From Thalia democratica (lineage: Eukaryota): a stretch of DNA of 64,000 nt. This document shows, in pieces, positions 23,662 through 64,000 of the stretch. Each line of letters starts with the position of its first letter. Positions within the stretch are counted from its first letter, which is position 1. The translations under genes were made by a program, and so were the position numbers. Where the stretch lies: positions 36,890,001 through 36,954,000 of the forward strand of contig OZ241830.1 in assembly GCA_965202585.1 (NCBI GenBank), given 5' to 3'. The notes below the pieces were generated by a model, which was not told where the DNA came from, did no database searches, and worked only from the letters and a program-made list of their open reading frames with translations.

Positions 23662-26600
23662 CGCGGGATATTTAGCATGACGTAAAATCTGTCAAACATA
23701 ACTTATTACGTTTGCTAAATACTATAACTTAGTTGCATGCAGCTGCTTTATCCTTTCTTCTTACTGCGCTGTTGGTTGTTTTCGGGCAGTATATAAATCT
23801 TGACTCATATGAGTAAAGGTGTTGCATGCATTACAAGATATTTGTACAAAATTCATGCTTGTTCGTTTTTTTTTTTAATAAATTAGAGACACAAATCATT
23901 TGTTTATTGTTGTTGTATTGTTTGTTGTGCTATGTTAGATTCAGGCATCAAAACCTGGGCCACTTAAACTTGACACACAAAAAAAATAAAATTTAAAAAT
24001 AAATCATATTGAGCAAATTAAGAAACAAAATACAAATTCACAAATTTTATTCTAAATTGCTTAAAACTTCCATTATAATATGCTATTTAATGAAAATATA
24101 TTATTATTATTATTATTATTGTTTTTCAACTAGCAAGTACAATTTAACTTCAAAAATTTTCAATGTAGTTACTAAGGTGTAATTACACTTACTTTAATAT
24201 ATATTAGTTATTTGTTAAACAAACCATATAATTTTAAACTACATAGCAATTGTGAATTGAATGAAATATTGCAAGGTCCAACACTTATACATCACATAAC
24301 ATCAACAACAGCAGGAATAAAGAAAATGAAGTGAAATGAGCAAAAAATATCAAGTTATGCAAATTTATGTGTATGTTTTTTGTGAGAAAAGGTTAACTGG
24401 ACATACTTACTTTTGACAATGACGTAACAGTTAGCATGCACTTATTTAGAAAAATTAATCTTACCATTCTTCTCAGGCAGGCATGGAGGTAGTCAGAACA
24501 GTTTTTTTATGATAAGGAAATAGGTCTACCGATTGTAATCGTTTTCGAACATAATCATTTAGAGTTATAAGTAGCTAGCTGTGTATTTTTCATAAGAAGC
24601 TTACTCTAAATTTATATTTTCTTTCATTTAACTCTTTTGTCAGATGTTTACATAATCTTACACTTAGTCATTCAGCTTAGCAAACAAGCTTTTTTATTTG
24701 TAGTTGTAATATCTTACTATCTTGATAGGAATAGTTTACAAACAGTTTTTATAAAATCATCTTTTATGAAGGAAACTTTTGAACAAATTAGACATTATCA
24801 TGAAAAATCAAAACTATGTCGACAAAAAGTTAATCTTTCATAATTTGATATTTTTTGCAGTAGTTAATCTCTTATAAGTAGAAAAATGTTAAGTTTATAA
24901 AAGTTACAAGTCTTTCTTTATATATTCTTTTGGTACTATTTCTTTCATAAAACACTCAAGTCTTTTCAAACAAGATGTGCACAGCTTTTATAGACTGATT
25001 TTTTGTCTTAATTAGGTATTTAATAAGTTTTAATTACGCTAAAAACCAGTTTTATCTGTCATTTATAATTAAGTAATACTATATATTAATTAAAAGTCTA
25101 TAAATTGTAGACTTTCAATATGTACACTATGTCTTTTTGGAACCCTTTTTATTGTAGCCTACAATATAATAGTTAAATGTTATACAAGACTGAAGTGTTC
25201 TTTTCATGCATAACACTGTGTGAATGAAAATAATAAAGTTTATTGTATTCCTTAACAAGAAAGCCAGAATTGCAATAAGATTTTTGGAATTTTAGCAGGT
25301 TGTGTTTATTTGCCAACTACCTGAAATTTTTATTTGGGATTGGATTTTGGGAAGGTGCCGGCCAATTCGGGAATTTCCCCTAAATCGAAAACAATTTTTA
25401 AAATAAAATTTTAAGTTTTTGATTTTATTTAGGGCAGGTTATGCTGTCATCTTCAATGCTTTTTAAATGTGACAGCATCTTAAAGCACACAAGTTGTTTA
25501 CAAAATACATTATTAACAGAACATATTACACCCACTAATTGGGTATATCGAAAACATAGCTTTTGATTTAGGGCAGGTTATGCTATGAGTGTCCTTAGTA
25601 TACCCATTTGCTTAAAGAGCTTTGATTTTTATAATGCACATTTAATGTGGCTGTGACTTTATTACATATTTCAATGCTTATAAGTTGTTTGTAATCCTTT
25701 TAATAACAGGACATATTACAGCTACTGTTTAGGTTATTTATTAAAAAGCTTACGCATTCAAAATATATTTTTTATTGCTAATTGGTACTATATTTTAAAA
25801 GTTTATAAATTAACTGGTTGTAATATTAGTTAGTCATGTTAATAATTAAGTGTTAACAGTTGTTTGTTGACCAAACATAACTTTTAACAAAACAATTCTT
25901 TATCAGTAACTATTAATTACCATCACAAGTTACTCCTAGTTCATTTAAAACTTAATTTTTACGTTATTATACACAATATATTTGTCCAGTTTAACTAAGA
26001 TAAATAATTTAAAAACTAAACAGCTAGTCTCAGTAGTAGTATATAAAACTTATTATTCACTCAGTAAAGATATACATGTCTGCGCTAATTATAGTGTTGT
26101 CCCAAAATACATTTGCTTACACCTTAGTAAAACATACAATTCCTATTTCTTTAGCTTATTAAACACTTTAATATCTACGCGAAATATATTTTTCAAAATA
26201 AGTAATATATATATAAAGTGGACTGGACAGTGTTTCAGAAATTATTTCCTTAACCAAAAATTTACACGATATGTATGATAAAAATCTACGTATGTAAAAA
26301 CCTTCTTTGTAAATAACATTAGTTCAATTGTTGTGGAGACTGTTTGTTTAGCATGCTGTTTAAAATACTTTTTTAAGGTTTGATAATGTATATAACAACA
26401 TTAAAATATCAGAGTTGTCTAGTTATATAACTGATCGTACTCAGTTTTATATAATTATCAATATATATAATTTTTTATCCGAAAATTTCAAACAATTTTA
26501 TGACTTAAGTCAGCAAACAATAACACTACTTTTAAAGATTTCTTAGTAGTAGTTACCAATTTTAATAATCATAAAACTGTAATTTTGTCAAGTTTTAAAT

Positions 26601-27121
26601 TTAATAGCTTAATTTAAGCTAAAAACTTGAAATATTAAATATGATGCTGCTATTAGTCTACGTCTACGTAAACATTTGAATAAAACTGTTTGAACAAATG
26701 TTATATTTTCGACAACTAGATTATAACTTTTTTATCAAGTTTTCAATTATAAATAAAAAGAAAAAAAAGAATTATTAGCACAAATAACATGAATCTTACA
26801 ACATAAAATAGTTTGAAAATTTATTTGACTTGCAACAAAATCCAACTTAAAACAAATTACAACTTAAAATAGCAATTAAGTATGTTTCAAGTTTATGTGC
26901 AAACTCAAATTATATTAAGTAACTTTTCCTAAAATAATAAATATCTAATTCTTACATCAAGCATAAGTGTGAACGGATTGAAACCAAAAATTTTACTAAT
27001 TAGCTCTTTTTTACAAAACAACCTTTAAAAACTTGTTTTTTACAAAGTCGCAACTCAAAAACTCAATAAAAAATTCGAAGTCGTTCGTTTTTATCGACTT
27101 TTTAAAACAACAGTTATTTTA

Positions 27122-27490
27122 CTTTTGCGTCTAAAGCATGCATGTAAGCAAACGGAAAGTCTAATTTTCGTTTCCTTTGCGCTGAAAAACTTTTACAAAG
27201 AAGAAACAAGCAGAATAGTTAAAGTCAAGCTTAATGTCGTTGTTTTGATTAAACACGTGTCTATTTTTTCTTTTAGTGAAAAAGGCGCTAATCAAAGTTC
27301 TTTCTTAAATTAACTAAACGAACAATGTTTCGCTGTCGGTCTTATTAAGTTTTTATAAAACAAACTTGTGTACATTAAGTTTAATTCTCGTGTTTTAAGA
27401 GAACTTTAGAATAAATAAGACCTTCTTCGCTCATTTTAGTTGGCCAAGTATATTAACAAACTTTCTTATTTGAAGACTAAAAATTCATCA
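27122..27490. promoter_or_regulatory. Paralog-conserved non-coding block about 3.7 kb 3' of DMRT copy 1; counterpart at 52252-52625
   Basis: Contains an 89-bp exact match (27402-27490 = 52537-52625) amid diverged flanks. A regulatory function is inferred. Confidence 0.6.
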
Positions 27491-28409
27491 AATTCATACT
27501 TTTGCAATATTTTAAAGTTTTTCTTTAGATTTTTTTAAAACAAAAAACTTATTTCAATTAAAAGACAGACTTATTTAAAATTCTAAAAAACAATAAATCT
27601 GTAATTTTTATGAGAAGTTTGTACTAAAATTTTAAAAACTCAAGTGGTTTCGTTGCAAATCAGAAATGTTTACTACATTTTAAAACAAAATTGCATTTTC
27701 TTGACATTTCAATCTTTGCAAACTGTATAAATATTTAAGTAGCTTTTTAAACTTTTTCTCATCTTTATGAAAGAAACTTTCGTTTATTAAAATGATACTT
27801 AGTCTCGATACAAACTTTCAAAAATTCTCGTTAATTAATAATAAGCTAAACACATAAGCACTTAGAAACACACCTTGGCTGACTCAAATATTTTACTCGC
27901 TTTTTAACATTTAAGAAGGGTTTTATGGTTGCTATGCAGCGTTGTTAGGGAGCAGCTGGGAAAATTTCTTAAGTGAAAATTATTAAATGGTCACGGGTAA
28001 AAACAATGGCCGATTAAAAATAAAACTTCTAATAACTTTTCATATTAAAGAACTTCAATGCTTGTTTTTAAAGGGCAGTTTTGTCGAGCTATTGTTAGTT
28101 TCTTTTTGAATTCGTTCGAAGCAAATCTTGGGCAAAAGAAAATATCTTGAAAGGTGCTTACATGACACAATAAGTAGAAATAAAATTTAGTCTAACCGCA
28201 TCATAGCGCACAAAGCTATTTATCTCGATATCAAATGAAGAAAGCTTATTTGAGTGCAAGTATTAATATTTTCAATATTTCAACCAAACCCGAATATTTT
28301 AGTACAAAGCCGTTTCAGATATTAAATAAACAGGTTGCTACCGCAAAATGTGAAAATAAAAATTATACACTTTAAATCAGAATATGTCTTTAAAATCGAA
28401 GTAACTGTA

Positions 28410-28612
28410 ATGCATGTGACGCTAGCCGCAGTTATTATGACGTCACAAACGCGTAGTCAGGTGGTCGGCGACGATTTCAGGGGGTTTCGGCGATTGGGCG
28501 ATTGCAATTTTGCACTTTTGTGAGACATGTTACAGATGTTGTTAAAATGGTGACAAATTAATTGGTGGCACAATGGAACATGTCACAAGTGTAAGAAATA
28601 ACTTCATTGTAT
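28410..28612. promoter_or_regulatory. Paralog-conserved CpG-rich non-coding block with a CRE palindrome; counterpart at 53548-53752
   Basis: Shared tgcatgtgacgc, ttatgacgtcacaaacgcgtagtcaggtgg and aaaatggtgacaaattaattggtg...catgtcacaagtgtaagaaataacttcattgt. Confidence 0.6.
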
Positions 28613-31219
28613 TTCTATAGATTAAGTTGTATGAGGGCAATTTTGTCGTGTCGGGCAGATTGCTTTATGTTTGAACTAGAAAATATCTTTTTGTTAATAA
28701 GTTCATTTATTCATTTTTTAGTATTTATGAGTTCATAAATACCAGTAGAGTAATGCACAAACTTAAAGTGAATATTTAACAGATCATTTCTTAAAAATAA
28801 GCATGTCATTTTTTAATTTTAATTAATCAACAATGGTTTAAGTTTTTGAAAATATATAAAACTTACTTTATTTTAAAGAACAAACATTGTTAGTAAAAAC
28901 TATCAATTTTTCATTCTTTATTATATAAGAAAGGTTTTAGTTTAAAATATAACATAACCTTTGAGTATTACTTTAGTAACAATTGTAAAAAAAATAAGCA
29001 GTTTAGTTTTTTTTCACGCCGACTATTCCCGAAAATAAAATAAAAACTCTCGATAATTCAAAGGAAAAATAAAAATAAAAACTTGATCATCTTAAATTAA
29101 AACAAATTTATCTAATCTTTTGAAATCCAAATAAAATGCCGTCATATTTTCACTTGTATCTAAAGTTTATTATAAATGCTAGAGTCTTCAATCATACTTA
29201 AAACAAACATTCTAGTTGTAAATACAACAGCTAGAAATCAAACATTTTGGGAAATAAAAACTTTTAAACTGCTTATTTGTACATAACTTTAATTAGTAAT
29301 TTTTATTTATTTAACAGTTTCTTTTTTTTTCGAAGTATGCTGATATGAACTTAATTAACTTATGTTCTTTAAAATTTTGCATATAAATTTCGTATATAGT
29401 TGAGTTTGCAATTTGAAATGTTTATTACAACAATAAATTAAAAATTAACATTTTTACTTTTTAAACCGCTTTACATGATAAACGCATTTTACAGAATACT
29501 TTTACTAAAAGTTTAGTCTTGTCTTTTTGCTTTTTTTCATTAGTCTTTATTATTTGATTTTGTGTAGAACAAAAAAACATATATCTAACAACACTTCCAA
29601 AATCTTTTTACTCTTATTATTGTTTTCTAATACTGTTACATTTGGAACCAGATACATAATAAACTTTTAGCTTTTATAAGCTTATATAAAAGTTTAAACA
29701 CTATATTAATTATTACTTTACAACTGGTTTTAATTTATATTTCATAACTACCTGGAGTTCGGTTTATTAACTAAAACTTTCTTGAACAATATTCCTGAGC
29801 TATATTTTTTGTACTATTAGTTATTGTAATCTATAATTAACTTTTAAAATTTAAGTGAGGTAATACTGTTAAGAATATTTATTTGAATTAAAAAAACGTT
29901 CACTCTATCGATTTTTTTTTATTAAAAAAAACTGGCTACATTTAACATTAAATGAAATTAAAATAAGAAACACAAAATATATTTAAAAAATCAGAATTAC
30001 TAAAATAATGAAAAACTAAAATTAAGTATTTGTTATTACAGTATTAAGCTATTTAAAGTATTTAGCCTTTTTTATCAAGAATTTGTTCTAAACTATCAGT
30101 TTGTATTTATAGTTTTGACAAGTAAATGAAAAGAATGAAGTATTATAAAAAGCGCTACTTACAATATAGTCAAGCAAAATGGCGAAACGCGTAAAGCCTT
30201 AAAAATATATTAAAAAACAAAAACGACTAGAAAAAAAAGACATTGAAATTTTAAGTGAAAAAAGTTATTCAAATTTTACTCAGCGACAATAAAAGAACGG
30301 CAGTTAAAAACATTGAAATTTAATTTAATTCTTTCAGCAAGTTAACTTATTTTTTGTATTAATTGTAAATCAGCTTTTACTGTTTTTTAACTATTATAAA
30401 TTTAGGCTCAAATTGAGTTAGTTCAAGTATTTTCTTAACTCTGTTTTAGACTTTTATAAGTATGATTAACTTTTATTGTACTGACTAGAGACAGGCAACT
30501 TTGTTTATTAAATGGCTGTAGACTTTTAAAGTGTAATAAAAAGATAAGTAAGTGTTGACTTAATTATTTATAGAATAAACTATTAAAGTCGTACTATTTA
30601 AAGGACTAACTTGGTTATTTTTAAACTTTAACAAAACAAAGCAGCTGCATCAAATGAACAGAATGCACCTATCAAAACAAATTTCAGTACTATCAAAAAA
30701 CATTGATGCATCTAAATTGATATCTCTCTGTTTGTGATGAAAACTTTGTAATTGTTATACACAATTTACTGCAAACTACACATTTCTAGTATTTTTTTTC
30801 TTACATTATATATCAATGTTTCCCAAAAAAAAGCATATACCATTCGTATAGACTGTTTTCCTATACACAGAAAAATGCATAGCTAAATGGTAACTTAAAC
30901 ATTCAAGAATAGGTATACACCTAATCTTATTGCAAAACACTTTTTATGTAACTCTTATCAAGATTTTTGTTGTTTAAATGAACATTATTAAAAATATTTG
31001 AAACAAATAAAAAAAAACCGTACATTGTTTACATCTTTATTTTTAGTTACTGTGCTTGGCTATTGATATTCGGGAAACACTGGTAGATGCTATGCATGAA
31101 TAAAATCAAAAAAAATATTCAGTTCTGTAGTTCATTCGAAAAAATTAAAGTTATTTTATTAAACAATAAAATAGTTAACTATTGACTTTTTTAACATCGG
31201 TTTCGGGTTTTTCCTGTTT

Positions 31220-33663
31220 TTAAATTTGCCTGTTCATCTGCATCATCAGCTCGTTTATGGAAAGTATCTTGTTGCTTGGCAACTTGTTGCCGTTGTTGAG
31301 GCTATACCCCTGCGGACCCTCGGACCCCGCAAAACTTTGCTGCTGCTGGGGCCGCTGGATCTGGTTGTAGGCGCTGGGAATGAAGGGGGAGATGTTGAAA
31401 GGGAGTTTTCCTTCGTTGAAACTCGACGCCCTCATTTGATGGGACGTTGTGGCAGGAAAGTTTTTGGGGAACCCTCTGCTGATTTTATGGTAATTCCCCT
31501 GAATGGCGGCGTGCATGGCGGCTATTTGCTGCTGGGCCATCAGCGCGTAGTTATGATTGAAGTTTGATTGGCTGAACAACTGGCCGGTTGAAAGGGGATT
31601 ACGCTGAATCGGCATGTTGTAGTAGGCGTAAGTTGGATAATCTGATGGAATATGTAATATTAAAAAAGTTCATTACAGTTGTTTAAAACATTATTTCAAA
31701 ATAAAGTCAGTTTTTTTTCTTGTGTAAACTTTATTAGATTTCTTAAGATAAAAATAAATAAAATGTAATGCTTAACAATTGGTAGTTAGTTTTATCAAAC
31801 GAGTAAAAGTTTATAAGAATGGTCTATTTTTAGAAATATAGCTTAACTGACTTTGTCTAGGTTTCACATGTAATGATTGTTTCTGCACTTTTCTGCTGAC
31901 TTCCCTCTCAATGTCAGGTGACACTTTTCTTTTCAAGTTTCGCGGGTGACTGATATTCGGTGGCACCACATTGTTCTCCGTGTTTTTATGACTTAACATC
32001 TACAAAATAGGAAATATTATAGTTTTGTATGCTTCGGTTAAACTTTTAAAAGTATCAGAAAAAGAAATATTTCATAGCCATATTGAATTGACTTCGAAAA
32101 AAAAACCAAGTTCATAATCTTTAAAAAAACATTTCAACTTAATATGAATTAATTAAACTTTTAGAGAAACTAATAAGATAAAAAAGAGTTTTGTGCTCAT
32201 TCAGGATTGTATATAAAAAATAACTAAAGTTTACCTGCTTAATTGTGTACATCACATTACAATTGTTATTCTGATAAATTTTCGCGAGATAGTTCTTGTC
32301 GTCTTCAGGAAAAAGCTTGTAAAGCATTGCAAAGTCTTGTTGCTCGCTTCAAAATAATTAAATTCATTTAAAAGATAATAAATTACGATTTAAACTGCCA
32401 ATAAAATTGATTGAAATTTAAGATGTTATCGATTAAAACTACAAGTTTTAGTAGTTTAAATCAAGTGTGAGCATAGCTTGTAAAAAAATCATTAAAAAAT
32501 TTGTACCTTTTTTGTACATCCCCGTTCTTTTCTGACAGGTTAACATCAAAATCCACAGCCTTTAGAGCTTCATTGTTGCTAATATCTGAACTTTGAGACG
32601 GAGATTTTAAGCTTTCGTCAATAACGGAACAATTTCTTTTATTTTCTTCTATAATTTTTTTTAAAACCAAACTAAACAAACTCTTATACAAATAAATTAA
32701 CAGTTGAACTACGATTTAAAGTTTAATAAAAAAAAAATATTTTTCACTTTTAACTATTTTTTAAGCAATACGTTTAATTTCAAACTTTATTATTAACAAT
32801 AACTTGAATAGCTACACAAAATAAAAAAAATTATTTATCATTTTCTAACAAACCTGAATCGCTGCCGGACATCGAAGCAATCGACGGCTTTGCTTTGAAC
32901 TCGTCGACATTGACCTCCTTTTCCATGGGAGCTTTCTCCTCCAGGCTTGCTACGGGTGATTTCACCGATGACGTCACCAGCAAGCTTACGGTTGGCGAGC
33001 TGCTGGCTGAACTGCGGTGGTTCAGGTACCCGTTGCTAGTGGCAACCTCGGGCAACGGGGGGCTGAAAGGGGTCTTGTTGATGTTGTACATCAGCTGCAG
33101 CTCTCTCGCTTCGTTTTCTTCCTGCGCCTGCTGCCTTCTGAGGGCTACCTGTGTTTAAAGAACTCAAATTAAAACAAATAACTAGCAGTTGAAGTATTTG
33201 AAGCATACAGTGCTTAATTGCAATAAAACCACTAAAGCAGCTAATTAAATAATAAAACAGAATCAAAAGCTTTAAGAAGTTGTTGATACCTACTAAGTTA
33301 GTTTTCGAACATTTCTTTTATATGCTCATATTTATCTAACGAATTTTAATATTCTAGTTTTCAAACCTTAGCCGTCATGACCCTCTGCCGCTCTGCAATC
33401 AAGGTGCACTTTGCACACATGCAGTCCTTCCACTTGCAGTACCTCTTGTGGCCCTTCAGAGGGGAAACCACCCCGTGGTTGCGGCACCTGGCGCATTTGG
33501 GGGCGCGCAGGTACTTTTCCATGTTGGCAATCGTCGTCCGTAGCAACACGGGTTAGCGGTGGTGGTTTGGGGGTTCTCCCTGCTGTTAGATCATCTGTTG
33601 GGTGGATTGAAGGTCGAAGACGGAGGAGGTGGGAGTCTGCATCAGTTGGTTTGAAAAATTCAT
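31220..33663 (-). CDS. dmrtA: DMRTA/Dmrt99B-like paralog, copy 1. Exons: 33663-33367, 33148-32854, 32648-32507, 32346-32235, 31999-31852, 31641-31220. In-frame TAA at 33588-33586 and 33555-33553. Open 424-aa frame from the ATG at 33522. Either a truncated CDS or a young pseudogene.
   Basis: DM domain [45 protein letters not shown]|[21 protein letters not shown] and DMA-like [32 protein letters not shown]. The lengths of exons 1-5 (297, 295, 142, 112, 148) are identical to copy 2. Whether it is translated is unknown. Confidence 0.8.
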
Positions 33664-33950
33664 ATATTTTGATATTCAATTAAACTAGCTGCAAATTTTT
33701 TATGTTTTAGTTAGGTTACTTAGTATAAAACATTTAAATAATCAAATAAAAACTATAAAAACGTATTAACCAAAAGTAGTATCATTCAAGCCTGTTGCTA
33801 ATAATGTTGGTATAGTAAGTTAATCAGAAATAGGTGACTAATTGTAATATATTTTTTCTTAATTTTTTAAAAGCACGAAAGATTGAAAAATAAAATTTAA
33901 AAACATTGAAACTGATGGTAGTTTACATTCTACAAATACCCGACGCGTAC

Positions 33951-34062
33951 CTTCTGGTATTCTTTTCACAAGCTAAAACTTTTTTATTTTCAATATAGAA
34001 CATAAGTTGTTATTGTATCTGCAACTAAACATTTTTCAGCTTCGAAATAAACAAAAAACTAT
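33951..34062 (-). other. Probable 5'-UTR exon of DMRT copy 1 (donor at 33950, acceptor before 33688); counterpart 57876-57986 in copy 2
   Basis: Near-identical block in both copies that ends at a conserved gtacgc donor on the minus strand. A conserved ttgcag acceptor lies 25 nt before the ATG in both copies. Confidence 0.55.
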
Positions 34063-35599
34063 AAAAAATAAATAAAATGTAATTTGCTATTGATTGCAAA
34101 ACACTGCTAATAATTCTCGTCGGCTTCTAATGATAAACAAGTTTACGCCTTTCCTTTGAACTAAAAGTAAAAGTTATACATGGGCTGATTTTTTTTTCTT
34201 CTCACAATATCTTTCTCTCATATTATTATTTCTTTTTCTAATTTATCTCTCATTTTGTACTACTTCTCTCGTAAAAATTCGTACCTGCGTGACACAACTT
34301 GTAATCTATTATTTTACCTTTTAATATAATAATAACTTTTTTTGCACTAATTTTAATCTTAAAATAACTGGTTTGTAAGGTTATTGTAAACGTATAAAAT
34401 AAAAATATAAAACTGTTGAGTTTTCTTAATATGAACTCAAGTTGTTTGGGGATTGTAAGTATAAAACATTACACTTAGAAAACTTTGATATCCTGAATAT
34501 GTAATTCACCAAAACATATTTCGTTTAACTTTTATGAGTAATAAGTATAAAAAAACGTTTATCTAATTTATTTGCATTAGTACTTTTAAAAAAAAGTTGT
34601 CTGCCTCAAAGTTATAACACAATTGAAACCTTATGTATCCAGATTAAATATGAAATCATTTAATCCACCTTTACAATCTATTTACAAAAAAAAAAAACGT
34701 TAAGTAAATTGCAATATAAATAAATTCAACCTACAATATCTTTCGTTATCATAAAAATTCTCAGTACCTAATAATAGGGCAGTGTTCAAACATAGATTTA
34801 CAAATTAAACAAAGAAACAGCAAACAATGTAACAGAGGTAAAAATATTTTGTAGGTGGTTCAGTGTAGAGGTTTTAACAACTAAAGCGAGTGGTCAGATT
34901 TTAGATATTCATTTCAAATCTTCTAAATAAAGTTTTTCCGGCGCTGTTGAAAAATTTTAATTGAGCGATGTTACAATGAAGTAATATTTACAAATATAAT
35001 TAATATATTTCAGTATTTTTTTGTTTGTTTTATTAACAATACATTTTTATTATAAGTTTACAGTTCAAGTAATTGTGTTTTCACACTTAAAACTTTCTTT
35101 AAGCCATAAAAAATATTAATATACGATCATTGCTAATAACAAAAACTAATTTTAAAGTTAGTACAAAATTAAAAAAAAAGCTAGTTCAAAACTTTTCTTG
35201 ACCTTTTATTGTTTCAACAGTAAGTTTTGAATTCTAAACACTTTTGCTTTGTTTTTGAAATAACTCTTTAAAAACTTAAGAAAGTATGTTTTGTTTTAAA
35301 CTTTTAAAAAGAGTTTTAGAATTATTTTGTTGTTAAATTTAATTTATTAAGATTAGATAACTTAAAATAAAATTAGAGCAAACATTTTTTTAAGGTTTAA
35401 AAATAAATTGTTTCATCTAAGGACTTTAATGTTACTGTATTACAAAATAACAATTGGATGATTAAGAATAGCTAAGAAACTTGTTAAAAATAACGAGTAT
35501 TATAAAGTACCTAATTTAATACAATCAATTTTTTTTTTTCAATTTTTATTGATTAAGAATAAATTTCAATGGAAAATTCCGCAAACAACAAAATTGGAT

Positions 35600-35762
35600 G
35601 GTTTATTACGTAATATTAAGAAACGTGCGGAAGATCAATTAAATCGTTTTGTTTATTTTGATTTTGATCTCAAATTTCAGCACCGTTATGGGTAAGAGCG
35701 ATTCTGTTCGCATAAGACGACAATTTGTGCACGCGTATAGAGTTACAAAGATGTGAATTGAA
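35600..35762. promoter_or_regulatory. Paralog-conserved upstream non-coding block; counterpart at 59628-59788
   Basis: Shared caattaaatcgttttgtttattttgattttgatctcaa..tttcagcaccgttatgggtaaga...gattctgttcgcataagacgac..tttgtgcacgcgtatagagttac. Confidence 0.6.
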
Positions 35763-38385
35763 ACTATTTAACTTAATTGTTACTTTGCTAAACGCTCTAT
35801 CAATTTATGATTTTTTTATTGACAAAGCAGCTTATTGCTTACGTATTACCGCAAAGAAACATTTTTTATAAACTTAAAGAATTTCAAATCCAGCTGCACT
35901 TTTTAAAGTGAAATAAAAAACTTATCACATTTGAAAATTATTTTGCAGGACTAAAAGTAATAAATAAAATTTTTAATCTTCTCTTAAATTACAACGTAAT
36001 TATAGAAATTTTCGAGATGCTATTTTTTAAGAGCTTTAAAATGTTTTCCGACTTATTTTGTTTTTAAAAGTTCAATTATCTCAACTTTAAATATACTTTA
36101 AGTTGTCAGCTAAAACAAATTATATCTTCAGTTATATATGAAATAATTACTTACACTAAATTGACTCTGCCAGACATAATGTCTGGTTTTAATAAATTAA
36201 ACAAAAATTCAGTTAATAAATAAAAGTACATAAGTTTAATGTCTCACTAGATGTAAATAATTTTCTTTATTTCGACAATCAGAGAAGTGTTGAAGCAAAT
36301 ATTCTTTGTTGTTGTGAAATGTGAAAACTTACTTGTTCTTTTAAAACAAAAGGAGTAAGACAATAATGTTTAAGTTTGTAATTTAAAAAGTTAGGTCAAG
36401 CAATTGACCGCAACTTTTTAGCAACTAAATAGCTATTTTTTGCGTAATGATTTTTGCAAAAGTGCTTCTTTTGTTTACACTTACTAGAAAAAGTTTACAA
36501 CAATAAAATTTACTTTTTTTCAATTTTGTTCACACACTTTACATTTAACAGTTAAAAACTCATTTTTTAAACAAATAAAATAACTGTATAAATAAATATG
36601 TAAGCCAGGTGTTGATAACAATTATTACAAGCAGTCGTTATATGTACATTATTTTTTATTTAACATTTATTTCTTTCAACAACTAAAATCCATACTAGAG
36701 CTAAAAACTTTTATTTACATATTTTTTTCAAAAACCATTTAAAATAACTACCTAATTAACTTGATTTAAAAAAAATTTAATTTATTTCTTAAATTTTTAA
36801 GAAATAATTTATTGGTTGACTTAAACATTTTTTACCTATATAAATAGCAATCCGATGTTTTTTTATAAAAGTTTTAATATGTTTTCACTCAACTCGTCAG
36901 AAATTTATTGTAGACATTTAAAATAATACAATAGTTTTTTAATTAAAAACAAAAGTCTTTAGAAAACCACTTAAGTGATTAATCAAATTTCTGTATAAAA
37001 CAATCAACAAAATCTATAAAATGATGTAAAGTAGTAATTAATGCAAAAATAAACATTTTAAATTACAAAACAAAACTAAATGGTTAAAACCAACAAAAAC
37101 ACTTTTAAGTAAAATAAATGTTTAAAGACAATTTTAAATAAATAAAGAAATCTTATAGTCAAACTCTTTCTGTTTACATATTTCAAGTTTACTTAAAAAT
37201 GACTTAAACTTTGTCATTACGATTTAAAGAATAAGCAATAGATAGGAAGAAAATCTATAAACGCGTATAAGAAGTAAAGTGTAAGTACTTGCTTTTGTTC
37301 AAATATGAAAAATAAGTGGTTAGTTTAAAACTTAAGAAACTTCTATTAAATAAAATTTCCAAAACTCCTACCATAAACACTTTGATGTTTTGTATTCTAC
37401 TTCTTTCAAGTAGAAGTATTTGTTAAACTTCTTTGTATTCAATTTTATGTTACGTATAAACTAGGATATGCTAAACAATAATTCGAAGAGTACAAATAAA
37501 ATTTTTCACTTAGCTTTATCTAAAAAGAGTGCTAGTTCATACATGTTTTCTAACATACTTGTGAGCTTTTCTAAAAGATATTCCAAAACTTTTTGATAGT
37601 AGAATGCTCAAAACCTACAAAACTAATTAAAGATTTTTTTTGGCAAACTATTTAACCAAACAACTTCATCAACAAATGAATTCTTGTATTGTACATGGTT
37701 GAATTAAGCTAAATGCAATATTTGAATTAATCAATTTGAAAACAAAAAAATTTAAAAGTCAGGTAAAACAATTTTTTATTTATCATGTGAATGCGATTTA
37801 ATCCTGTCTTCTTCAAGTAGCTTCTAAAACTTAACGACGCCTTAAATTAAGTAAACTTAGAAAGTATTTCCTTTTTATGGTAGTTATTTTGTTTTTATAA
37901 CAATTAAAGCTTTAAAAATATTTTAAGTGCTAAGTAACTTTAAAGTAAAGCTAAAACAAAGTTATAAAATAGAAAAGTTATTATAACTAACAAAACATAA
38001 TTTCTATATATACGTAGGAAATACATAATTGTTATTACAAATATACTTTATAATTCATTATTGCAATTTTACACGTTATACAAAATGATTTAATTTTGAA
38101 AATAAAAAAACTAAAGTAAAAAGTTAATGTGTTTGTTTTAGTTTTTTCAAACGCAAAACAGTGACTAATTTGAAAACTTTAATCACTGAGACATAAAAAT
38201 TATTTCACTCGTTCATCATTGCAAAATTACATTTAAAACAAACACAAGCATTTCGTAAAATTAAAAAATCACCTAACAACTGCTAGTTCGATCTTTTAAC
38301 TATTAATAGGTGTGCTTAAAGGTTGAACATTAACGGAGTGATTCTGTTTTGAATAGAAATATTCATAGATTCTAACCCCTTTTTT

Positions 38386-38494
38386 CATAACAACTATTAA
38401 TATGTCAGTTCGATGTACCGTGTGTGGGCCTGGGTTGTTTTTTGTAGTTTCAAGATGCAACATAAACAACTGTCACATGTTTCATTTTAAACGT
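38386..38494. promoter_or_regulatory. Paralog-conserved 109-bp upstream block; counterpart at 62225-62333
   Basis: Only 2 mismatches in 109 bp by eye. Contains E-box words caactg and cacatg and a tgtca word. Confidence 0.6.
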
Positions 38495-41169
38495 GTTTTC
38501 TGGCCTTTTTTGCAAAGGACAACACGAGGTTTAAATTTTGATAATTTATATATCTTAAACTCTGAATTTTTTTTTTCGTGTTTGTTTAGAAATATCTAAA
38601 TTTAATTTTTGTACGGTTAAAAAGTGCTGGTTATCTATTTAAATGTTTAAAGTTTTTGTTACTTAGCAATGCAAATAACTTTTTTTTGGTAAATAGACTT
38701 ATTTAAGTTTAATTTGTTAGTTTTATTTGTTATTTTCTAAATACTGCTATTCAAACCTAACTTAATAAAAATTTTAAGTGTTTTTATAACAAAAGTGTTA
38801 CAACTTGATTCGATATATACTCACAATAAGACTAGAACTTTTAAATTTGTAACAAATAATTATAGCATGTTGGTTTTTGTAAATCTAGTTTTTATGTTAC
38901 ATTAAAAAGTTTATAGTTCAGTTTTTTTTAATTAGAACATTAATAACTTATTTCAAAATCTAGTCTTTGCTTCAGCACAAGCTTGTTTTGTTAAAAACCA
39001 CTTTATAGGTAAATACTAAACTTCTTATGAAAATGTAAATTTTACGTTAAAATAAGAGTTAAATATTCAATAATTTAGAAAACTTGCTAACTATTAAAAG
39101 TTATCTAAAAACGTTAGATTACAAAAAAACTTATGTTTTATTTTGTTAATATATATTTTTTTTTGATTATCTCGTAAAATATTAGTCGCACTTTTTGAAA
39201 ACTTTTACATAAAAAACTTTTTTATACTATTTTTTCCAGATGTTATGTTCTTATATTTTTATCCACTTAGAACTTGTTAGAAATAAAAAAATGTAGCTTT
39301 TCTATCGATAAAGCAGTTATTTTAAAATGATAGTTCGTAAAAAATTACTAAAGCAAAGATAATGGTATAAAAATGTTAAAAAAAAGTTTAAAAGCGAATA
39401 CGCTTGATGTATCCATTTAGATTACTTTTTTTTAAACATCAAAAACTTCGTGTTGGTTTTATGATATAATTAATTAAAAAGAAAATTAACTCTACTACAA
39501 TACAAAACCAAAACGGCATAAGTTTATAAGTCTACAGGCAAAAATATTAGATTTTAAAACATCATCCAAAAGTAAATTGTTTTTTTTTTGTTTTTTTGTA
39601 ATATTCAGTATAATAAAGCAGTAGTAAATCTTAATATAGCAAATAGTAAATAGTACTGGAATTATTACGATTTTCAACAACAAAATAAAAACATTTATTA
39701 TGGTTGTTTTAGCTTTTGCTTAATTAAGATTGTTTAATTGCATTTAGTTAAACTTGATATTGAATTTGTTTTTTTTTGTTTAACGTAACAAACTTAATTT
39801 TGAAAATCTTGAATTTATCATTTTGATTTACAAATGATTTTAGTTTTTTTATTAGACGTACATAAACCTTTATTTTTGTAACTCGAACTACTTTCTAAAA
39901 TTTATTTGCTTCTTTCTTTTAAATGAAACAAAATTTTACTCTGACTAATTTAACGTTGACTTTGTTACAAGTAAGTAAAACGCCAAAACGATTTTTTTTG
40001 TTAAAAGAAATAGATTAATCAAAAAAACTTATTTTAAAAATTAGTTTCAAAATAGATAATGTAATTAAAGAATAAAAAAAGCAATAAATTAAAAAAAAAG
40101 CTAATAAACTCTGACGATCCTTAGTTTTTCACTTAACATTTTCATTAGAAGCTTTTGCAAGGTACTTCTGTCGAAGTCAATCTTATTTTATTCCTTGTAC
40201 TATGAGCTTCTGAATAATGTTTCTCAATTTCTTTAAGTCTTAAATTTAAGTTATTTGTTTTTTTTTTAGATTATCCATGTTTTTTTTTGTGTTTTTAAAC
40301 GTAATTACGTATATTTTTTCAAACAAAAGTCAGTAAACCAGGTCCATATAACCGAAAGGTTTTTCGTGCACAAGGTCCAAGGACCAAATGTTTTGATATT
40401 CAATAAACTAGACCAACTAATTAATGCTATTACAAACGCACTCTCTGTAAGATAAAAATAAAAAGTAATTGATTTTTTAGATTTGTTATTTTAAATGATG
40501 TAAAAGACTACTTCATGTTATTTTATAGCTCTACAACTAAAAATAAACTTTAAATGAGAAAGATAAAATGCAAAACTAATTATTTCAAATAGCGATTTAT
40601 GTTCATTTCAAATATAAATTTACAGTTAAAAATTTACAAAACATGTTTTATAAAAGAAGTATTTATTTTTTAAATATATATTTTTATACATTTGTTGTAT
40701 AACCTTAAAATCATAGAGTTTAAGAAGTAATTGCATCTTATATTTTCAAAAATATTTATACATTTAAATTTTTACCATTTCAGAGGGCATTAATTAATAA
40801 TCAAAGGTTTATACGATTTCTTTTTAAGTGTGTAATATGTTTTATTATTTATATTGCATGTTTGACAAATTATAAGAATACGAATAAACTAGATACAATT
40901 AAGAAAATACTAATAACTAATTGGTTTTAAAAGAATTCTGAATGTTTTTGAAGGGAAATATGAAAGCAACCGATTATTTATAAATTCATTATTAGTATAC
41001 TTTGAAAACCGAATCAACCAAGTTAGTTAATAATTCATTTTAGTTTAGAAGATGAAATGCTGTATCTGACTTGTTACAAATTTGTTTTAATTTACTTTAT
41101 ATTTAGTGGTTTAAAATTTTTCTGGGCATAAAAACTTTAAAAATAAGTATTCCAGTCTTTAACATTATT

Positions 41170-41340
41170 TGTCGAATTACGAAGCAATCAAATCAACTAC
41201 TGTGCAATTTCACTTTCAAAACTTAATTCAACTTCAGACTATTAGTCGCGTAAACCAAATTTTGCAACTATTTTTCGCGATTTAAACCGTAGCGCAGTTA
41301 GTGCTAACTCTAAACTTGAAGCATCTATCTTGCTCAACGC
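41170..41340 (+). repeat. Degenerate extra copy of the GC-richer block found at 42390-42990 and 63525-64000
   Basis: caatcaaatc..ctact...aatttcactttcaaaactt.attcaacttcagactattagtcg...ttaaacc...aagcatc.atcttgct.aac is present in all three. Confidence 0.8.
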
Positions 41341-44300
41341 TAAACAAATTAATAAAGTAAACAAAAGTATAAATGTGAAAAAAATGAAATTATTTTATGG
41401 TCTGTGATTAAAACTAAAATCTACAGGTTATTCAAGTGTGACTAAAATTAAAACTGCTGCCCACGAAGATTTTAAAACTCGAAATTTGGCCCGCGAGTAC
41501 CAATTTCTTGCTGACTCCTGTTCTACACAATATAGAAACTTTTAAACTTAAGTGATTAATACTTAATCTGTGCCCAGAAAGATAAAAAATATTTCTTAGT
41601 ACTTAATAAAATGTTTGGTTTTAAATTGAATGTAGCATTAAACTAACAATTATTTGCACATCTAAAATAGGAAAATGCATTTTTTGAAAAAAAAGTTAAA
41701 GCAATAGAACTGTATATTTAGCAATATGTTAAAAATTGCACGATAACAACTGTTGAACATTTAATGAAAATAAAAAAATTCAAACTAAATATTATATAAG
41801 CTTTAAAATCTGATAAGAACGTAGTTTAAATATTTTTACAGTAGATAAAACTATTTATTTCACAAGATCTTTGTATCTTTTCCGTTTTTAAGCTTTTAAG
41901 TGTTTAACTATTGTTACTACATAACTAAAAAAGTAAATAGTTGAGAAAATAAAATATAAAACCATCATTCTTATTATATCTTGCACAATAAAAATTTAAA
42001 GCCCTATATTTTTTAAAAATGACATATTTGCTATTAATCAAGTAAACCATTATTCATATTTCATAGTTGACAAAATATAAGAGCTATCTGAATACAACAA
42101 AGCAGATAAGTCATTGTTTTTTTTTTGTATAAGTTATTCTAAATAGCTAATGAAAAATTTTGAATAGATGTGGTTAAGCCACAGAATTCAACTAAAGATT
42201 TAACACCATTTATCCTTTGAAAATTTAAACATTTAAATATCCTACTATTTTAATTCACTTTGAAAAATAAAATGCTTAATCTATTTATTTTTTACAATTT
42301 TTTGTAATTTGTTTATTAAGAGTAGATTAAAACATTTTAGCGCCATGGTAATTTTTAATACAAGTGTTTAAGTGTCAATAACCATTCATCGCAGATTTAC
42401 GAAACAATCAAATCGGCTACTGTTTCAATTTCACTTTCAAAACTTCATTCAACTTCAGACTATTAGTCGTGTAAACAATCTCGACACTTTTATGCGTGAC
42501 TTAAACCACGGCGCCACCAATACTAAACTAAAAGCATCCATCTTGCTTAACCCGGTGTTACGTCATAATGCTTGGCAACAATGTAGATAATCAACTAGAT
42601 TGAGATTGCGGCGGAATCGATGATATTTACGAGGCGCCACGTCAGAGAAATTTTAGAAAGTTTAAACACCATCGAGACTTTGAGAGACTAAAACTTTTTT
42701 TTGTTAAAAATGCATTCGGGGTGGTATATATCAATTTTTATGTTCCTGTTTCTACTTAAATTATTTTATTACTTCATGCCTACTCGAGCTTTCAACGGAA
42801 GTTATTTTTAAAACGTTAACACCTTGACGTATTAGCAGTATTACGTCATAATTGACAATAAGATACAGTCGAGTTCTTTTCTCTTTCGCGTAATTTGCAT
42901 TGTGTTTTTAGTAAACTCAACCTTATTTAATTTTTAGAGGTCTTCAAGTTTTTCGGGTTGAGTTTAGGAAAATAATAAAAAGTGTGCTTTGAAGAATTGG
43001 TGTTTTATATTTTTACGGTTAAATTAATCGTCAACTTTTGAAAAAAATTGTTAAGTCAATATGTTCAAAAGTAAAGTATTTTAGCCATTTTATATTTTTG
43101 TTTTTTAAAGTCTTAAATAATAATAAAAGATATTAACATGAATATACATTTTAATCTGCTATCATTGTTTAATCAAAGTATTTTTTTTTTTGTTTTAACA
43201 CTCTTTTACAATGATACTGATAATGCCCCAAACTCTCCGGATTACTATAAAAGCGAGTTTTTCATCAAGTTTCTGATTCAGTTATTTTTTAAATTATTTG
43301 GTATGCTTATTATAAACATACTTTTACGTTGTATTACGTAAAACATTACAAAATATATAAAGAAAAAGGTTTGAAAAAATAGAAACTAAAAAAGTTGTTC
43401 AATAATCAACTTAGAAATTTATAATAGCAAAAAATACGAAGTTTAGCCAACTTTATTAAGATAAGCAATAAGTTACGGAGGTACTAAAATTATTATTAAA
43501 CTACATAAACCTCTCCCTAACCTACGCACATTGTGTCTGCAGCGTTAGAAAGTAAACGATACAACGTAATTAAACGAGAAGTAGCTAATTAACTTCAATA
43601 ATGGCCGGTTTTAAATAGTTCATTTGATTACAAACAGTTTGGGAACAAACAAGTTCTACGGAAAGTATGTTGTATTAAATTAAGTAAAAAAGTAATAACA
43701 TACATTCAAACAATTTTGATTAAAATTAATTAGTATACTTAATTCAGTGCAAATTATGTGGTTTTTAGTCTTAGTATGTTTGGAACAAGCACAAAACATA
43801 TTTAAAAACTATATATATTTCAAAAGCAATTTTAGCAAGCTCACGTACAGCTTTTAAATCTTTAAGAGTTATGGCAGTTAATCAAAAATATACGAGTATT
43901 TAATTTTACAATATATGCAGAAAATAAGATATTTAAAGAAAATTATTGACTTTTCTTATTAATTTATCTTTCAAATTAGAATAAAAAATTTAGTTTAAAA
44001 ATAAATAGCAGACTTTTATATTGTTTTCTAAGTAAAACAAAAACTTTAAAATGCTTCTATCTGCGCCTAAAATACCCAAAAAAGGGGTGAAAAAAAACAC
44101 ACAAAAGGTATAATTGATATTGAAAAACATGTTTATGACGTCACAAAGGCTAGTTAGATAATATTTTTCATCAGAAAATTATTTTTTTTTAAGTCTGCTG
44201 TTGTATTATCAAATCCCCATAAAAAGTGGGCGAATGTATGCAACAACTACTAAATTTTAATTCCGTCTTTTAGACCTAGTTTAACTTCCTCTGATTACTT

Positions 44301-63500: not shown

Positions 63501-64000
63501 TCCATCTATATTTATCACCGATTAACAAAACAATCAAATCGGCTACTGTTTCAATTTAATTTCAAAACTTCATTCAACTTCAAACTATTAGTTGCGCAAC
63601 GAATTCGACACTCTTATGTGTGACTTAAACCACGGCGCCACCAATACTAACGCAGAAGCATCCATCTTGCTCAACCCGGTGTTACGTCATAATGCTTGGC
63701 AACAGTGCAGATAATCAACTAGGTCGAGATTGCAGCAGAATCGATGATATTTACGAGGCGCCACGGAATTTTTAGAAAGTTTAAACACCATCGAGGTGTT
63801 GAGAGATTAAAACTTTTTATTGTTAAAACTTTATTCGGGGTGGTATATTTCAACTTGTCAACACCGTGACGTATTATCATTATTACATCATACTTGACAA
63901 TAAGATACAGTCGAAGTTTTTTTCTGTTTTGCGTAATCTTCATTGTGTTTTTAATAAACTTCTAAATTATTTCATTTTTAGTGGTCTCCCAGTTTTTTTT
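51597..64000 (+). repeat. Tandem segmental duplication, copy B, which runs off the window end
   Basis: Colinear with 26270-42990. Confidence 0.95.
55088..57582 (-). CDS. dmrtA: DMRTA/Dmrt99B-like DM-domain transcription factor, copy 2, intact, 484 aa. Exons: 57582-57286, 57025-56731, 56544-56403, 56239-56128, 55908-55761, 55548-55088.
   Basis: The exons sum to 1455 nt (485 codons) with no internal stop. All introns are GT-AG with matching phases (0,1,2,0,1). [52 protein letters not shown]|[21 protein letters not shown] is the DMRTA/99B-type DM domain. The DMA-like segment is [32 protein letters not shown], followed by a Q/P/S-rich C-terminus. Confidence 0.95.

What the first reader, a model, noticed from the sequence alone, without database searches (positions are those of the whole stretch)
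33520..33663. DMRT copy 1 appears re-started: two upstream stops and a new strong-context ATG at the DM domain
Seen: codons 26 and 37 are TAA. Codon 48 (GCA, Ala, in copy 2) is ATG in gccaacATGG (-3 A, +4 G), six codons before PKCARC. The three upstream ATGs all have a pyrimidine at -3, and no other ATG lies between the first stop and 33522. From 33522 the frame is open for 424 aa across all six exons, with splice sites and exon lengths preserved although the introns have many indels. In a 79-codon stretch of exon 2 I count 8 synonymous and 11 amino-acid-changing codon differences. Inference: the old N-terminus became a 25-codon uORF, and copy 1 may encode an N-terminally truncated DMRT under translational control. 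That would be a candidate neofunctionalised or dominant-negative paralog, analogous to truncated DMRT-derived sex determiners.
Basis: partly seen in the sequence, partly recalled or inferred. Interest (0 to 1): 0.85.

Follow-up and report, generated by a model that had tools for sequence, protein, structure and literature searches.

The report
Decaying tandem copy of DMRT gene
One of two neighbouring copies of a DMRTA-type developmental regulator gene carries three premature stop codons and has lost protein-level constraint, so it is most likely a dying duplicate, though its unusually intact 424-codon reading frame keeps a shortened, re-started protein possible.

Summary
Copy 1 lies on the minus strand in six exons, 33663-31220. 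It has TAA at codons 26 and 37, and ATG at codon 48 where all relatives have Ala. From there 424 codons are open, and every splice site and exon length matches copy 2.

New facts change the reading:
- Eleven related contigs from ocean metagenomes serve as outgroups. They show a third derived TAA at codon 472, which removes a conserved C-terminal tail.
- Copy 1 has private changes at near-invariant DM-domain positions: A97T and Q99K (0 of 244 DM domains), plus P52L.
- A restart at M48 would drop the PxLLxR motif, which is conserved from vertebrates onwards.
- The ATG is explained by two CpG transitions. Its good context is inherited.
- A codon branch model gives dN/dS = 1.35 on the copy 1 branch (95% CI about 0.73-2.8). 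Paralogs give 0.12-0.46 (p about 2e-6).

Against a plain pseudogene:
- There are no internal stops (P about 0.004-0.1) and no exon indels.
- GC3 is retained.
- Spliced copy-1-like RNA contigs exist.

Verdict: most likely a decaying, still transcribed paralog of a multi-copy family (0.5). A functional restart protein is not excluded (0.33).

The parts
33367..33663 (-). Copy 1 exon 1: old start ATG 33663-33661, N-terminal region, and the DM domain (codons 53-99, continuing into exon 2)
   Evidence: Translation, gene model, Pfam DM E=6e-25
33586..33588 (-). TAA at codon 26. Relatives have TCA (Ser); copy 2 has TTA.
33553..33555 (-). TAA at codon 37. Relatives have CAC/CAT (His), so two base changes are needed.
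33520..33522 (-). ATG at codon 48. Relatives have GCG/GCA (Ala). C-GCG-G to C-ATG-G is two CpG transitions. The -3 A and +4 G are inherited from the flanking Asn and Asp codons.
33508..33510 (-). P52L in the YPR motif just before the first zinc ligand. Pro is invariant in the DMRTA alignment, and no Leu occurs at this position among 244 DM domains (129 Pro, 106 Gln).
33367..33375 (-). Recognition-helix motif MAAQ changed to MTAK (A97T, Q99K), private to copy 1
   Evidence: Ala in 243/244 and Gln in 243/244 DM domains; neither Thr nor Lys seen there
33605..33694 (-). 90-nt tract (5' UTR plus codons 1-19) identical to copy 2, although neighbouring sequence differs by about 20%. Probably a gene-conversion tract.
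   Evidence: the metagenome relative L001 differs at several sites in the same tract
32854..33148 (-). Copy 1 exon 2
32507..32648 (-). Copy 1 exon 3
   Evidence: spliced E3-E4 contig in RNA-like run X4
32235..32346 (-). Copy 1 exon 4, with a weak DMA-like motif
   Evidence: 14.3 bits, below the Pfam cut-off of 23
31852..31999 (-). Copy 1 exon 5
   Evidence: the E5-E6 junction type 31852|31641 is seen in X4
31220..31641 (-). Copy 1 exon 6, ending at a third derived TAA (31222-31220). Copy 2 and all five contig relatives have CAG/CAA here, followed by a conserved tail.
55088..57582 (-). Copy 2: intact 484-codon paralog. Exons 57582-57286, 57025-56731, 56544-56403, 56239-56128, 55908-55761, 55548-55088.
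26306..42953 (.). Copy 1 block of the tandem segmental duplication. Its partner is 51641-63997, at about 80-85% identity.
   Evidence: self-BLAST

Best explanation
Copy 1 is a decaying member of a multi-copy, tandemly duplicating family of DMRTA2-like genes.

After duplication it lost selection on its amino-acid sequence. It picked up three nonsense codons (26, 37, 472) and replacements at near-invariant DNA-binding positions. It is probably still transcribed and spliced, because promoter and splice signals were duplicated with it. A recent gene-conversion tract keeps its 5' end identical to copy 2.

On this reading the ATG at codon 48 is a by-product of CpG decay in a favourable inherited context, not an evolved start. 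The long open frame reflects a recent or incomplete death of a copy that was earlier kept open but evolved fast.

Shown here: the anatomy, the three derived stops, loss of constraint, the family context, and copy-1-like spliced RNA contigs. Inferred: that no useful protein is made.
For: - Outgroups polarise the changes. All relatives have Ser26, His37, Ala48 and a conserved C-terminal tail, so copy 1 has three derived TAA codons.
- Branch codon model (my GY94-F3x4 implementation; copy 1, copy 2 and nine of the eleven contigs, as two 7-taxon exon blocks): omega on the copy 1 branch is 1.27-1.35, against a background of 0.31 (0.12 for E1-E2, 0.46 for E3-E6). Equal omega is rejected at p=2.4e-6. 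Omega=1 is not rejected (p=0.34-0.44). The 95% CI is about 0.73-2.8.
- No other terminal branch is elevated except L004 (omega 0.375 vs 0.127, p=0.055), another damaged copy. The result holds under an alternative topology.
- Distance-based branch estimates agree: omega 1.16 for E3-E6.
- Copy 1 differs at 15.8% of positions that are invariant in the others, against 7.6% for the other lineages (p=0.008).
- Its private replacements are as radical as random missense changes: mean BLOSUM62 -0.5, against -0.30 expected and +0.25 in the other lineages.
- A97T and Q99K hit positions that are Ala and Gln in 243 of 244 DM domains. P52L hits an invariant Pro of DMRTA proteins.
- A start at M48 would omit the PxLLxR motif, which is invariant from Xenopus DMRTA2 to this family.
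- Family context: at least 14 exon-6 variants and 5 exon-1 variants occur in ocean metagenomes, and 7-10 distinct DNA unitigs cover exon 2 in single runs. That is a birth-and-death setting.
Against: - The 424-codon frame has no stop. In a neutral simulation with 60-130 substitutions, P(no stop) is 0.004-0.10.
- The three stops sit at the extreme ends. For three uniformly placed stops, P is about 0.005 that the longest open stretch is at least 434 of 485 codons (my arithmetic).
- There are no exon indels, although noncoding DNA shows one indel per 13 mismatches.
- All 10 splice sites are intact.
- GC3 of copy 1 (0.55 and 0.75) is not below copy 2 in a genome with about 24% GC. Its substitutions are less AT-biased than my rough 3:1 neutral estimate from the 24% GC of noncoding DNA (45:26, p=0.03).
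- Omega in the DM/E2 block is 0.53, not 1.
- The RNA-like run X4 holds a spliced E3-E4 contig with 2 mismatches in 106 nt to copy 1, and a 3'UTR contig of the copy 1 locus.
- These points require at least a long phase in which the frame was kept open.
Confidence: 0.5

Rival explanations
1. Functional restart. The old N-terminus acts as a 25-codon uORF. Ribosomes reinitiate, or scan leakily past three weak-context AUGs, at M48. The product is a DMRTA protein without its 47 N-terminal and 13 C-terminal residues and with an altered recognition helix. It evolves under relaxed or diversifying selection as a neofunctionalising paralog.
For: - The uORF is short and is followed by a 63-nt spacer. M48 is the only in-frame AUG that keeps the whole DM domain, and it has A at -3 and G at +4.
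- All zinc ligands are intact, and the Pfam DM score is almost equal to copy 2 (87.3 vs 88.6 bits).
- The ORF, exon lengths and splice sites are preserved beyond the neutral expectation, and the stops occur only at the ends.
- GC3 is retained.
- Copy-1-like spliced RNA contigs exist.
- Omega in E3-E6 is 1.85, which could reflect positive selection (p=0.087 against 1).
Against: - There is no detectable purifying selection on the protein: omega 1.35, with 0.5 rejected at p=7e-4.
- Replacements are as radical as random ones and hit conserved positions as often as variable ones.
- A97T, Q99K and P52L lie at near-invariant positions.
- The conserved PxLLxR motif and the C-terminal tail would be lost.
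- The ATG is explained by CpG decay.
- An early stop followed by five downstream junctions invites nonsense-mediated decay (general knowledge).
- No copy-1-type exon 1 or exon 6 was found in the metagenome or transcript protein collections.
Confidence: 0.33
2. Segregating null or sex-limited allele. The stops belong only to the assembled haplotype, while the other haplotype at the same locus encodes a full-length protein. In that case the locus is a live gene and the window shows a loss-of-function or haplotype-specific allele.
For: - The copy 1 locus is heterozygous in the DNA run X1. A second haplotype differs at about 5% of the 3' flank.
- That haplotype is the only form seen in DNA run X3 and in the RNA-like run X4.
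- It carries the family-consensus Pro at codon 446, where the reference has Leu.
Against: - The state of codons 26, 37, 48 and 472 on the other haplotype could not be read, because the tables were truncated.
- The X4 E4 contig has only 2 mismatches to the reference in 106 nt, across about 10 copy-1-private base changes. So at least about 8 of these changes are shared, and the fast evolution predates the haplotype split.
- Three individuals say nothing about sex linkage.
Confidence: 0.12
3. Assembly or sequencing artefact: the stops are errors in the assembly.
For: No independent read support for the three codons was visible in the truncated tables.
Against: - Codons 37 and 48 each need two base changes.
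- The surrounding 99 nt differ from copy 2 at 20 sites.
- Exact-match unitigs of the reference haplotype exist in the introns and exon 3 in X1.
- There are no indels and no homopolymer context.
Confidence: 0.03

Closest known systems
DMRTA2 / DMRT5 (vertebrates), DMRTA2-like of hemichordates and echinoderms, Dmrt99B (arthropods)
   Same: - DM domain with the same flanking motifs (PxLLxR and (E/D)KYPR(T/A)PKC) and a short N-terminus.
- The best full-length match is Glandiceps talaboti DMRTA2-like, at 60% identity over exon 1, and it shares the first residues.
- There is a weak DMA-like motif in exon 4.
   Different: - The DMA motif is below the Pfam threshold.
- The Q-rich C-terminal half has no match outside ocean-metagenome relatives.
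- Here the gene is a multi-copy family, not a single conserved gene.
- Copy 1 has stops and an altered recognition helix.
DM-W of Xenopus laevis and the DM-only iDMY of a spiny lobster (truncated DMRT-derived sex determiners; from my own knowledge)
   Same: A duplicated DMRT paralog that retains the DM domain, evolves fast and differs in length from its parent.
   Different: - Those proteins lack the C-terminal regulatory part and are sex-linked.
- Copy 1 would lack only 47 N-terminal and 13 C-terminal residues and would keep the rest.
- Its DNA-recognition helix is altered.
- No sex linkage is known.
Transcribed duplicated pseudogenes in birth-and-death gene families
   Same: Tandem origin, several nonsense codons, dN/dS about 1, replacements at invariant residues, retained promoter and splice sites, and gene-conversion tracts shared with the live copy.
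   Different: There are no frameshifts and no internal stops in 424 codons, and codon GC3 is retained. This copy is less decayed than expected for about 60-90 private substitutions.
Early nonsense alleles rescued by downstream reinitiation (general eukaryotic translation; from my own knowledge)
   Same: A short upstream reading frame, tens of nucleotides of spacer, and a strong-context in-frame AUG downstream.
   Different: No translation evidence exists here, and the downstream protein shows no sequence constraint.

Membership tests
DM-domain (DMRT) proteins | Intertwined zinc module with all Cys/His ligands (CxxC..H..H..C..CxCxxC) | tested here: met
   Both copies match Pfam PF00751: E=2.4e-25 for copy 2 and 6.2e-25 for copy 1 from M48. 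All ligands are present. The solved DMRT1 domain 4YJ0 matches at E=4e-25.
DM-domain (DMRT) proteins | Conserved recognition helix ERQRVMAAQ | tested here: not met
   Copy 2 has MAAQ. Copy 1 has MTAK. Thr and Lys at these positions occur in 0 of 244 DM domains.
DMRTA subfamily (DMRT3/4/5, Dmrt99B/93B) | DMA domain downstream of the DM domain | tested here: inconclusive
   Exon 4 scores 15.8 bits (copy 2) and 14.3 bits (copy 1) against PF03474; the cut-off is 23.
DMRTA subfamily (DMRT3/4/5, Dmrt99B/93B) | PxLLxR and (E/D)KYPR(T/A)PKC motifs directly upstream of the DM domain | tested here: met
   Invariant in the alignment from Xenopus DMRTA2 to copy 2. In copy 1 PxLLxR is still encoded (codons 38-43), but it lies between the second stop and M48, and YPR has become YLR.
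Selectively maintained protein-coding gene | dN/dS below 1 on its own branch | tested here: not met
   Omega for copy 1 is 1.35 (CI about 0.73-2.8). Omega=0.5 is rejected at p=7e-4.
Selectively maintained protein-coding gene | Open frame, intact splice sites, no frameshifts | tested here: met
   424 codons are open from M48, with 10 GT..AG sites and 0 exon indels. In the neutral simulation, P(no stop) is 0.004-0.10.
Pseudogene | Disabling mutations relative to functional relatives | tested here: met
   Three derived TAA codons (26, 37, 472), polarised with metagenome relatives.
Pseudogene | Neutral decay along the whole length (frameshifts, internal stops, loss of codon bias) | tested here: not met
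   There are no frameshifts or internal stops, and GC3 equals that of copy 2.
uORF / reinitiation-controlled mRNA | Short uORF, a spacer, and a downstream AUG in good context | tested here: met
   25-codon uORF, 63-nt spacer, A at -3 and G at +4.
uORF / reinitiation-controlled mRNA | Translation from the downstream AUG | not testable with these tools
   No ribosome profiling or proteomics is available. RNA contigs show only transcription and splicing of a copy-1-like sequence.
Truncated DMRT sex determiner (DM-W-like) | Sex-limited inheritance | not testable with these tools
   The runs carry no sex labels. The locus is heterozygous in X1 and homozygous for the other haplotype in X3, which proves nothing.
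Truncated DMRT sex determiner (DM-W-like) | DM domain retained with the C-terminal regulatory region lost | tested here: not met
   Copy 1 keeps exons 2-6 and loses only the last 13 codons.

The most novel reading that the evidence does not exclude
Copy 1 is a live, reinitiation-dependent DMRTA paralog. It is trimmed at both ends, has a re-tuned DNA-recognition helix (MAAQ to MTAK), and is kept open by selection while its sequence diversifies. It sits on a haplotype that is heterozygous in one individual and absent from two others. That would make it a candidate haplotype-specific, possibly sex-linked, regulator within an expanded DMRTA family of a marine planktonic animal.
Probability: 0.2. 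Interest if true: 0.7.

Novelty: new member of a known kind. Interest (0 to 1): 0.3.

Why it matters
As a decaying duplicate it is ordinary, and the high first-stage score should come down.

Two things remain of some interest.
- The combination of dN/dS about 1 with an unusually intact frame is a useful test case. It bears on telling a "dead" duplicate from one that is "fast-evolving but translated".
- The gene belongs to a previously undescribed multi-copy expansion of DMRTA2-like genes in an abundant marine animal. DMRTA genes are normally single-copy and conserved, so this may bear on how that lineage uses DMRT genes.

Tried and rejected
- **Ancestral-state reconstruction.** I did not try it by other means. 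I used distance-based branch estimates, site-pattern counts and a marginal-likelihood branch model instead.
- **Site-pattern count.** My first version accepted any outgroup as confirmation. It double-counted some sites as private to both copies, so I treat it as rough only.
- **JGI metagenome scans.** Two scans for exon-6 relatives found nothing.
- **Exact look-ups.** Eight ORFs from copy 1 and copy 2 are not in the protein collection.
- **Full-length family members.** A profile search returned only generic DMRTA2 orthologs.
- **Organism.** It could not be identified. The atlas search of the neighbouring Kelch ORF was uninformative.
- **DMRT1-DNA structure paper.** It is not held, so contact roles of A97 and Q99 rest on conservation only.
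- **Cryptic intron.** I considered one that would remove the stops. There is no plausible GT donor upstream and AG acceptor downstream within exon 1 (reading), so I rejected it.
- **Alternative exon-6 acceptor.** I considered an upstream acceptor, as suggested by the transcript protein P0251. The CAG|ATTATCC acceptor is conserved in copy 1, copy 2 and all five contigs that hold exon 6, and it is used in X4, so I rejected the alternative for copy 1.

Full report
**What is there.**
- The window is AT-rich, about 24% GC outside exons.
- It holds a tandem segmental duplication, 26306-42953 against 51641-63997, at about 80-85% identity.
- Each block carries a six-exon gene on the minus strand. Copy 1 is at 33663-31220 and copy 2 at 57582-55088. 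All introns are GT..AG, and exon lengths are identical except for the last exon.
- Exon 1 encodes a DM domain: Pfam E=2.4e-25 for copy 2 and 6.2e-25 for copy 1 from M48. The solved DMRT1 domain 4YJ0 matches at E=4e-25.
- Exon 4 holds a weak DMA-like motif, below the Pfam cut-off.
- The closest full-length named proteins are DMRTA2-like proteins of a hemichordate and of starfish.
- Motifs just upstream of the DM domain, PxLLxR and (E/D)KYPR(T/A)PKC, are invariant from Xenopus DMRTA2 to copy 2.

**The observation.**
- It holds in every detail. TAA sits at codons 26 and 37. ATG sits at codon 48 within gccaacATGg. The three upstream in-frame ATGs each have a pyrimidine at -3, and no further ATG lies before 33522. 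From there 424 codons are open.
Copy 1 stops 13 codons before copy 2.

**Relatives and polarity.**
- Protein searches with exon 1 and exon 6 of copy 2 found five exon-1 variants and fourteen exon-6 variants. Nearly all come from ocean (Tara) metagenome assemblies, plus one metatranscriptome protein.
- I fetched eleven contigs, L001-L011.
- All exon-1 relatives have an open N-terminus, with Ser at codon 26, His (Asn in L004) at 37 and Ala at 48.
- Nearly all exon-6 relatives that reach the C-terminus continue past copy 1's stop into a conserved tail, QIQ..EKPETDI..VDN; in the five fetched contigs the copy-1 stop position is CAG or CAA.
- So all three TAA codons are derived in copy 1.
- The ATG arose from GCG in the context C-GCG-G, that is, by two CpG transitions. 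The -3 A and +4 G belong to the ancestral Asn and Asp codons. The start codon and its context therefore need no selective explanation.
- Several distinct variants come from one metagenome sample. In single DNA runs, 7-10 distinct unitigs cover exon 2, and exon depth is about ten times intron depth.
- This is a multi-copy family. At least one other member, L004, has lost its first ATG and has changed invariant DM residues.

**Constraint.**
- *Pairwise.* Copies 1 and 2 give dN/dS 0.5 and dS 0.23. That alone cannot say which copy changed.
- *Trees.* Trees were made with the relatives.
- *Distance-based branch lengths.* These give copy 1 omega 1.16 in E3-E6, where other terminal branches are 0.27-0.61.
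- *Branch codon model.* I wrote a GY94-F3x4 model on fixed topologies. Missing data are integrated and no ancestral sequences are produced.
  - Omega on the copy 1 branch is 1.27, against a background of 0.31.
  - Equal omega is rejected (p=2.4e-6). Omega=1 is not rejected (p=0.44).
- *Block-specific backgrounds.* With backgrounds of 0.12 for E1-E2 and 0.46 for E3-E6, omega for copy 1 is 1.35. The likelihood interval is about 0.73-2.8.
- *Other branches as foreground.* No other terminal branch shows a significantly raised omega. The nearest is L004 (omega 0.375 vs 0.127, p=0.055). An alternative topology gives the same answer.
- *Otherwise-invariant positions.* Copy 1 differs at 15.8% of these, against 7.6% for the other lineages (p=0.008). 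It hits conserved and variable positions equally often.
- *Radicalness.* Its private replacements are as radical as random missense changes.
- *DM domain.* Copy 1 has A97T and Q99K in the recognition helix. These positions are Ala and Gln in 243 of 244 DM domains, and none has Thr or Lys. It also has P52L.

**What does not fit a plain pseudogene.**
- *Number of changes.* Copy 1 has at least 63 unique nucleotide changes in codons 48-471.
- *Stops.* If 60-130 neutral substitutions are applied to this frame, it stays stop-free in only 0.4-10% of simulations.
- *Placement of stops.* The three real stops lie at the two extreme ends. For three uniformly placed stops, the chance that the longest open stretch spans at least 434 of 485 codons is about 0.005 (my arithmetic).
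- *Indels and splice sites.* Exons have no indel, while noncoding DNA has 22 per 1,202 aligned bases. All splice sites are kept.
- *Composition.* GC3 of copy 1 equals that of copy 2 despite the AT-rich background. The substitution spectrum is less AT-biased than my rough 3:1 neutral estimate from the 24% GC of noncoding DNA.
- *DM/E2 block.* Omega there is 0.53.
- A simple two-phase history, with paralog-like constraint followed by neutrality, cannot satisfy both data sets. There must have been a phase in which the frame was kept open while the sequence was free to change. Whether that phase has ended is the open question.

**Expression.**
- Only one read-laying run was allowed.
- Run X4 behaves like RNA, with exon-only coverage and spliced junctions.
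- It holds an E3-E4 junction contig with 2 mismatches in 106 nt to copy 1. Copy 2 differs at 18 of 112 bases in that exon.
- It also holds a 607-nt contig covering exon 6 and the 3' flank of the copy 1 locus.
- Its E1-E2 junction contigs and the metatranscriptome contig in X8 come from other paralogs, since they read AAQ rather than TAK.
- So a copy-1-lineage transcript is made and spliced. That fits both readings.

**Haplotypes.**
- The copy 1 locus is heterozygous in DNA run X1.
- A second haplotype, about 5% divergent in the 3' flank, is the only form in X3 and X4. It carries the consensus Pro at codon 446.
- Its state at the stop codons could not be read.

**Gene conversion.**
- A 90-nt tract (33694-33605: 5' UTR plus codons 1-19) is identical between the copies. 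The next 99 nt differ at 20 sites.
- The relative L001 differs within the same tract.
- A recent conversion is the simplest explanation. It stopped just short of the first stop codon.

**Judgement.**
- Most likely (0.5): copy 1 is a decaying, still transcribed member of a birth-and-death DMRTA-like family, and the ATG is incidental.
- Possible (0.33): a translated, re-started and end-trimmed protein under relaxed or diversifying selection.
- Less likely: a haplotype-specific null allele (0.12) or an assembly artefact (0.03).
- The comparison with truncated DMRT sex determiners is not supported by anything tested here.

Noticed in passing
window 31220-33663 and 55088-57582; loci L001-L011: The DMRTA2-like gene is a multi-copy family. 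There are 14 exon-6 and 5 exon-1 protein variants (66-93% identity) in ocean metagenomes, several of them from one sample. In single DNA runs, 7-10 distinct unitigs cover exon 2, and exon depth is about ten times intron depth. DMRTA genes are usually single-copy.
   Followed up: partly
L004:43-337: Another family member has ATT in place of the first ATG and several changes at near-invariant DM positions (E to K, R to K, M to L). Its omega is raised (0.375 vs 0.127, p=0.055). It is probably a second decaying copy.
   Followed up: partly
window 30800-34400: The copy 1 locus has two haplotypes about 5% apart in noncoding DNA. Run X1 is heterozygous. Run X3 (labelled as another organism) and the RNA-like run X4 hold only the non-reference haplotype.
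   Followed up: partly
window 22396-23661 (+): An intronless, GC-rich (41%) BACK-Kelch reading frame sits in AT-rich DNA. It is interrupted by one in-frame stop at 23008-23010 and has no BTB domain upstream in frame. It may be a retrocopy or pseudogene.
   Followed up: partly
window exons of both copies vs introns: Exons have about 48% GC (GC3 0.53-0.75), while introns tens of bases away and the surrounding DNA have about 20-25% GC. The composition step at exon borders is very sharp.
   Followed up: no
L009:1-211: Exon 3 of this family member matches in two overlapping pieces, as if partly duplicated.
   Followed up: no
window 31642-31851 (intron 5): Intron 5 is much better conserved between the copies (15% mismatch) than the other introns (24-29%).
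   Followed up: no
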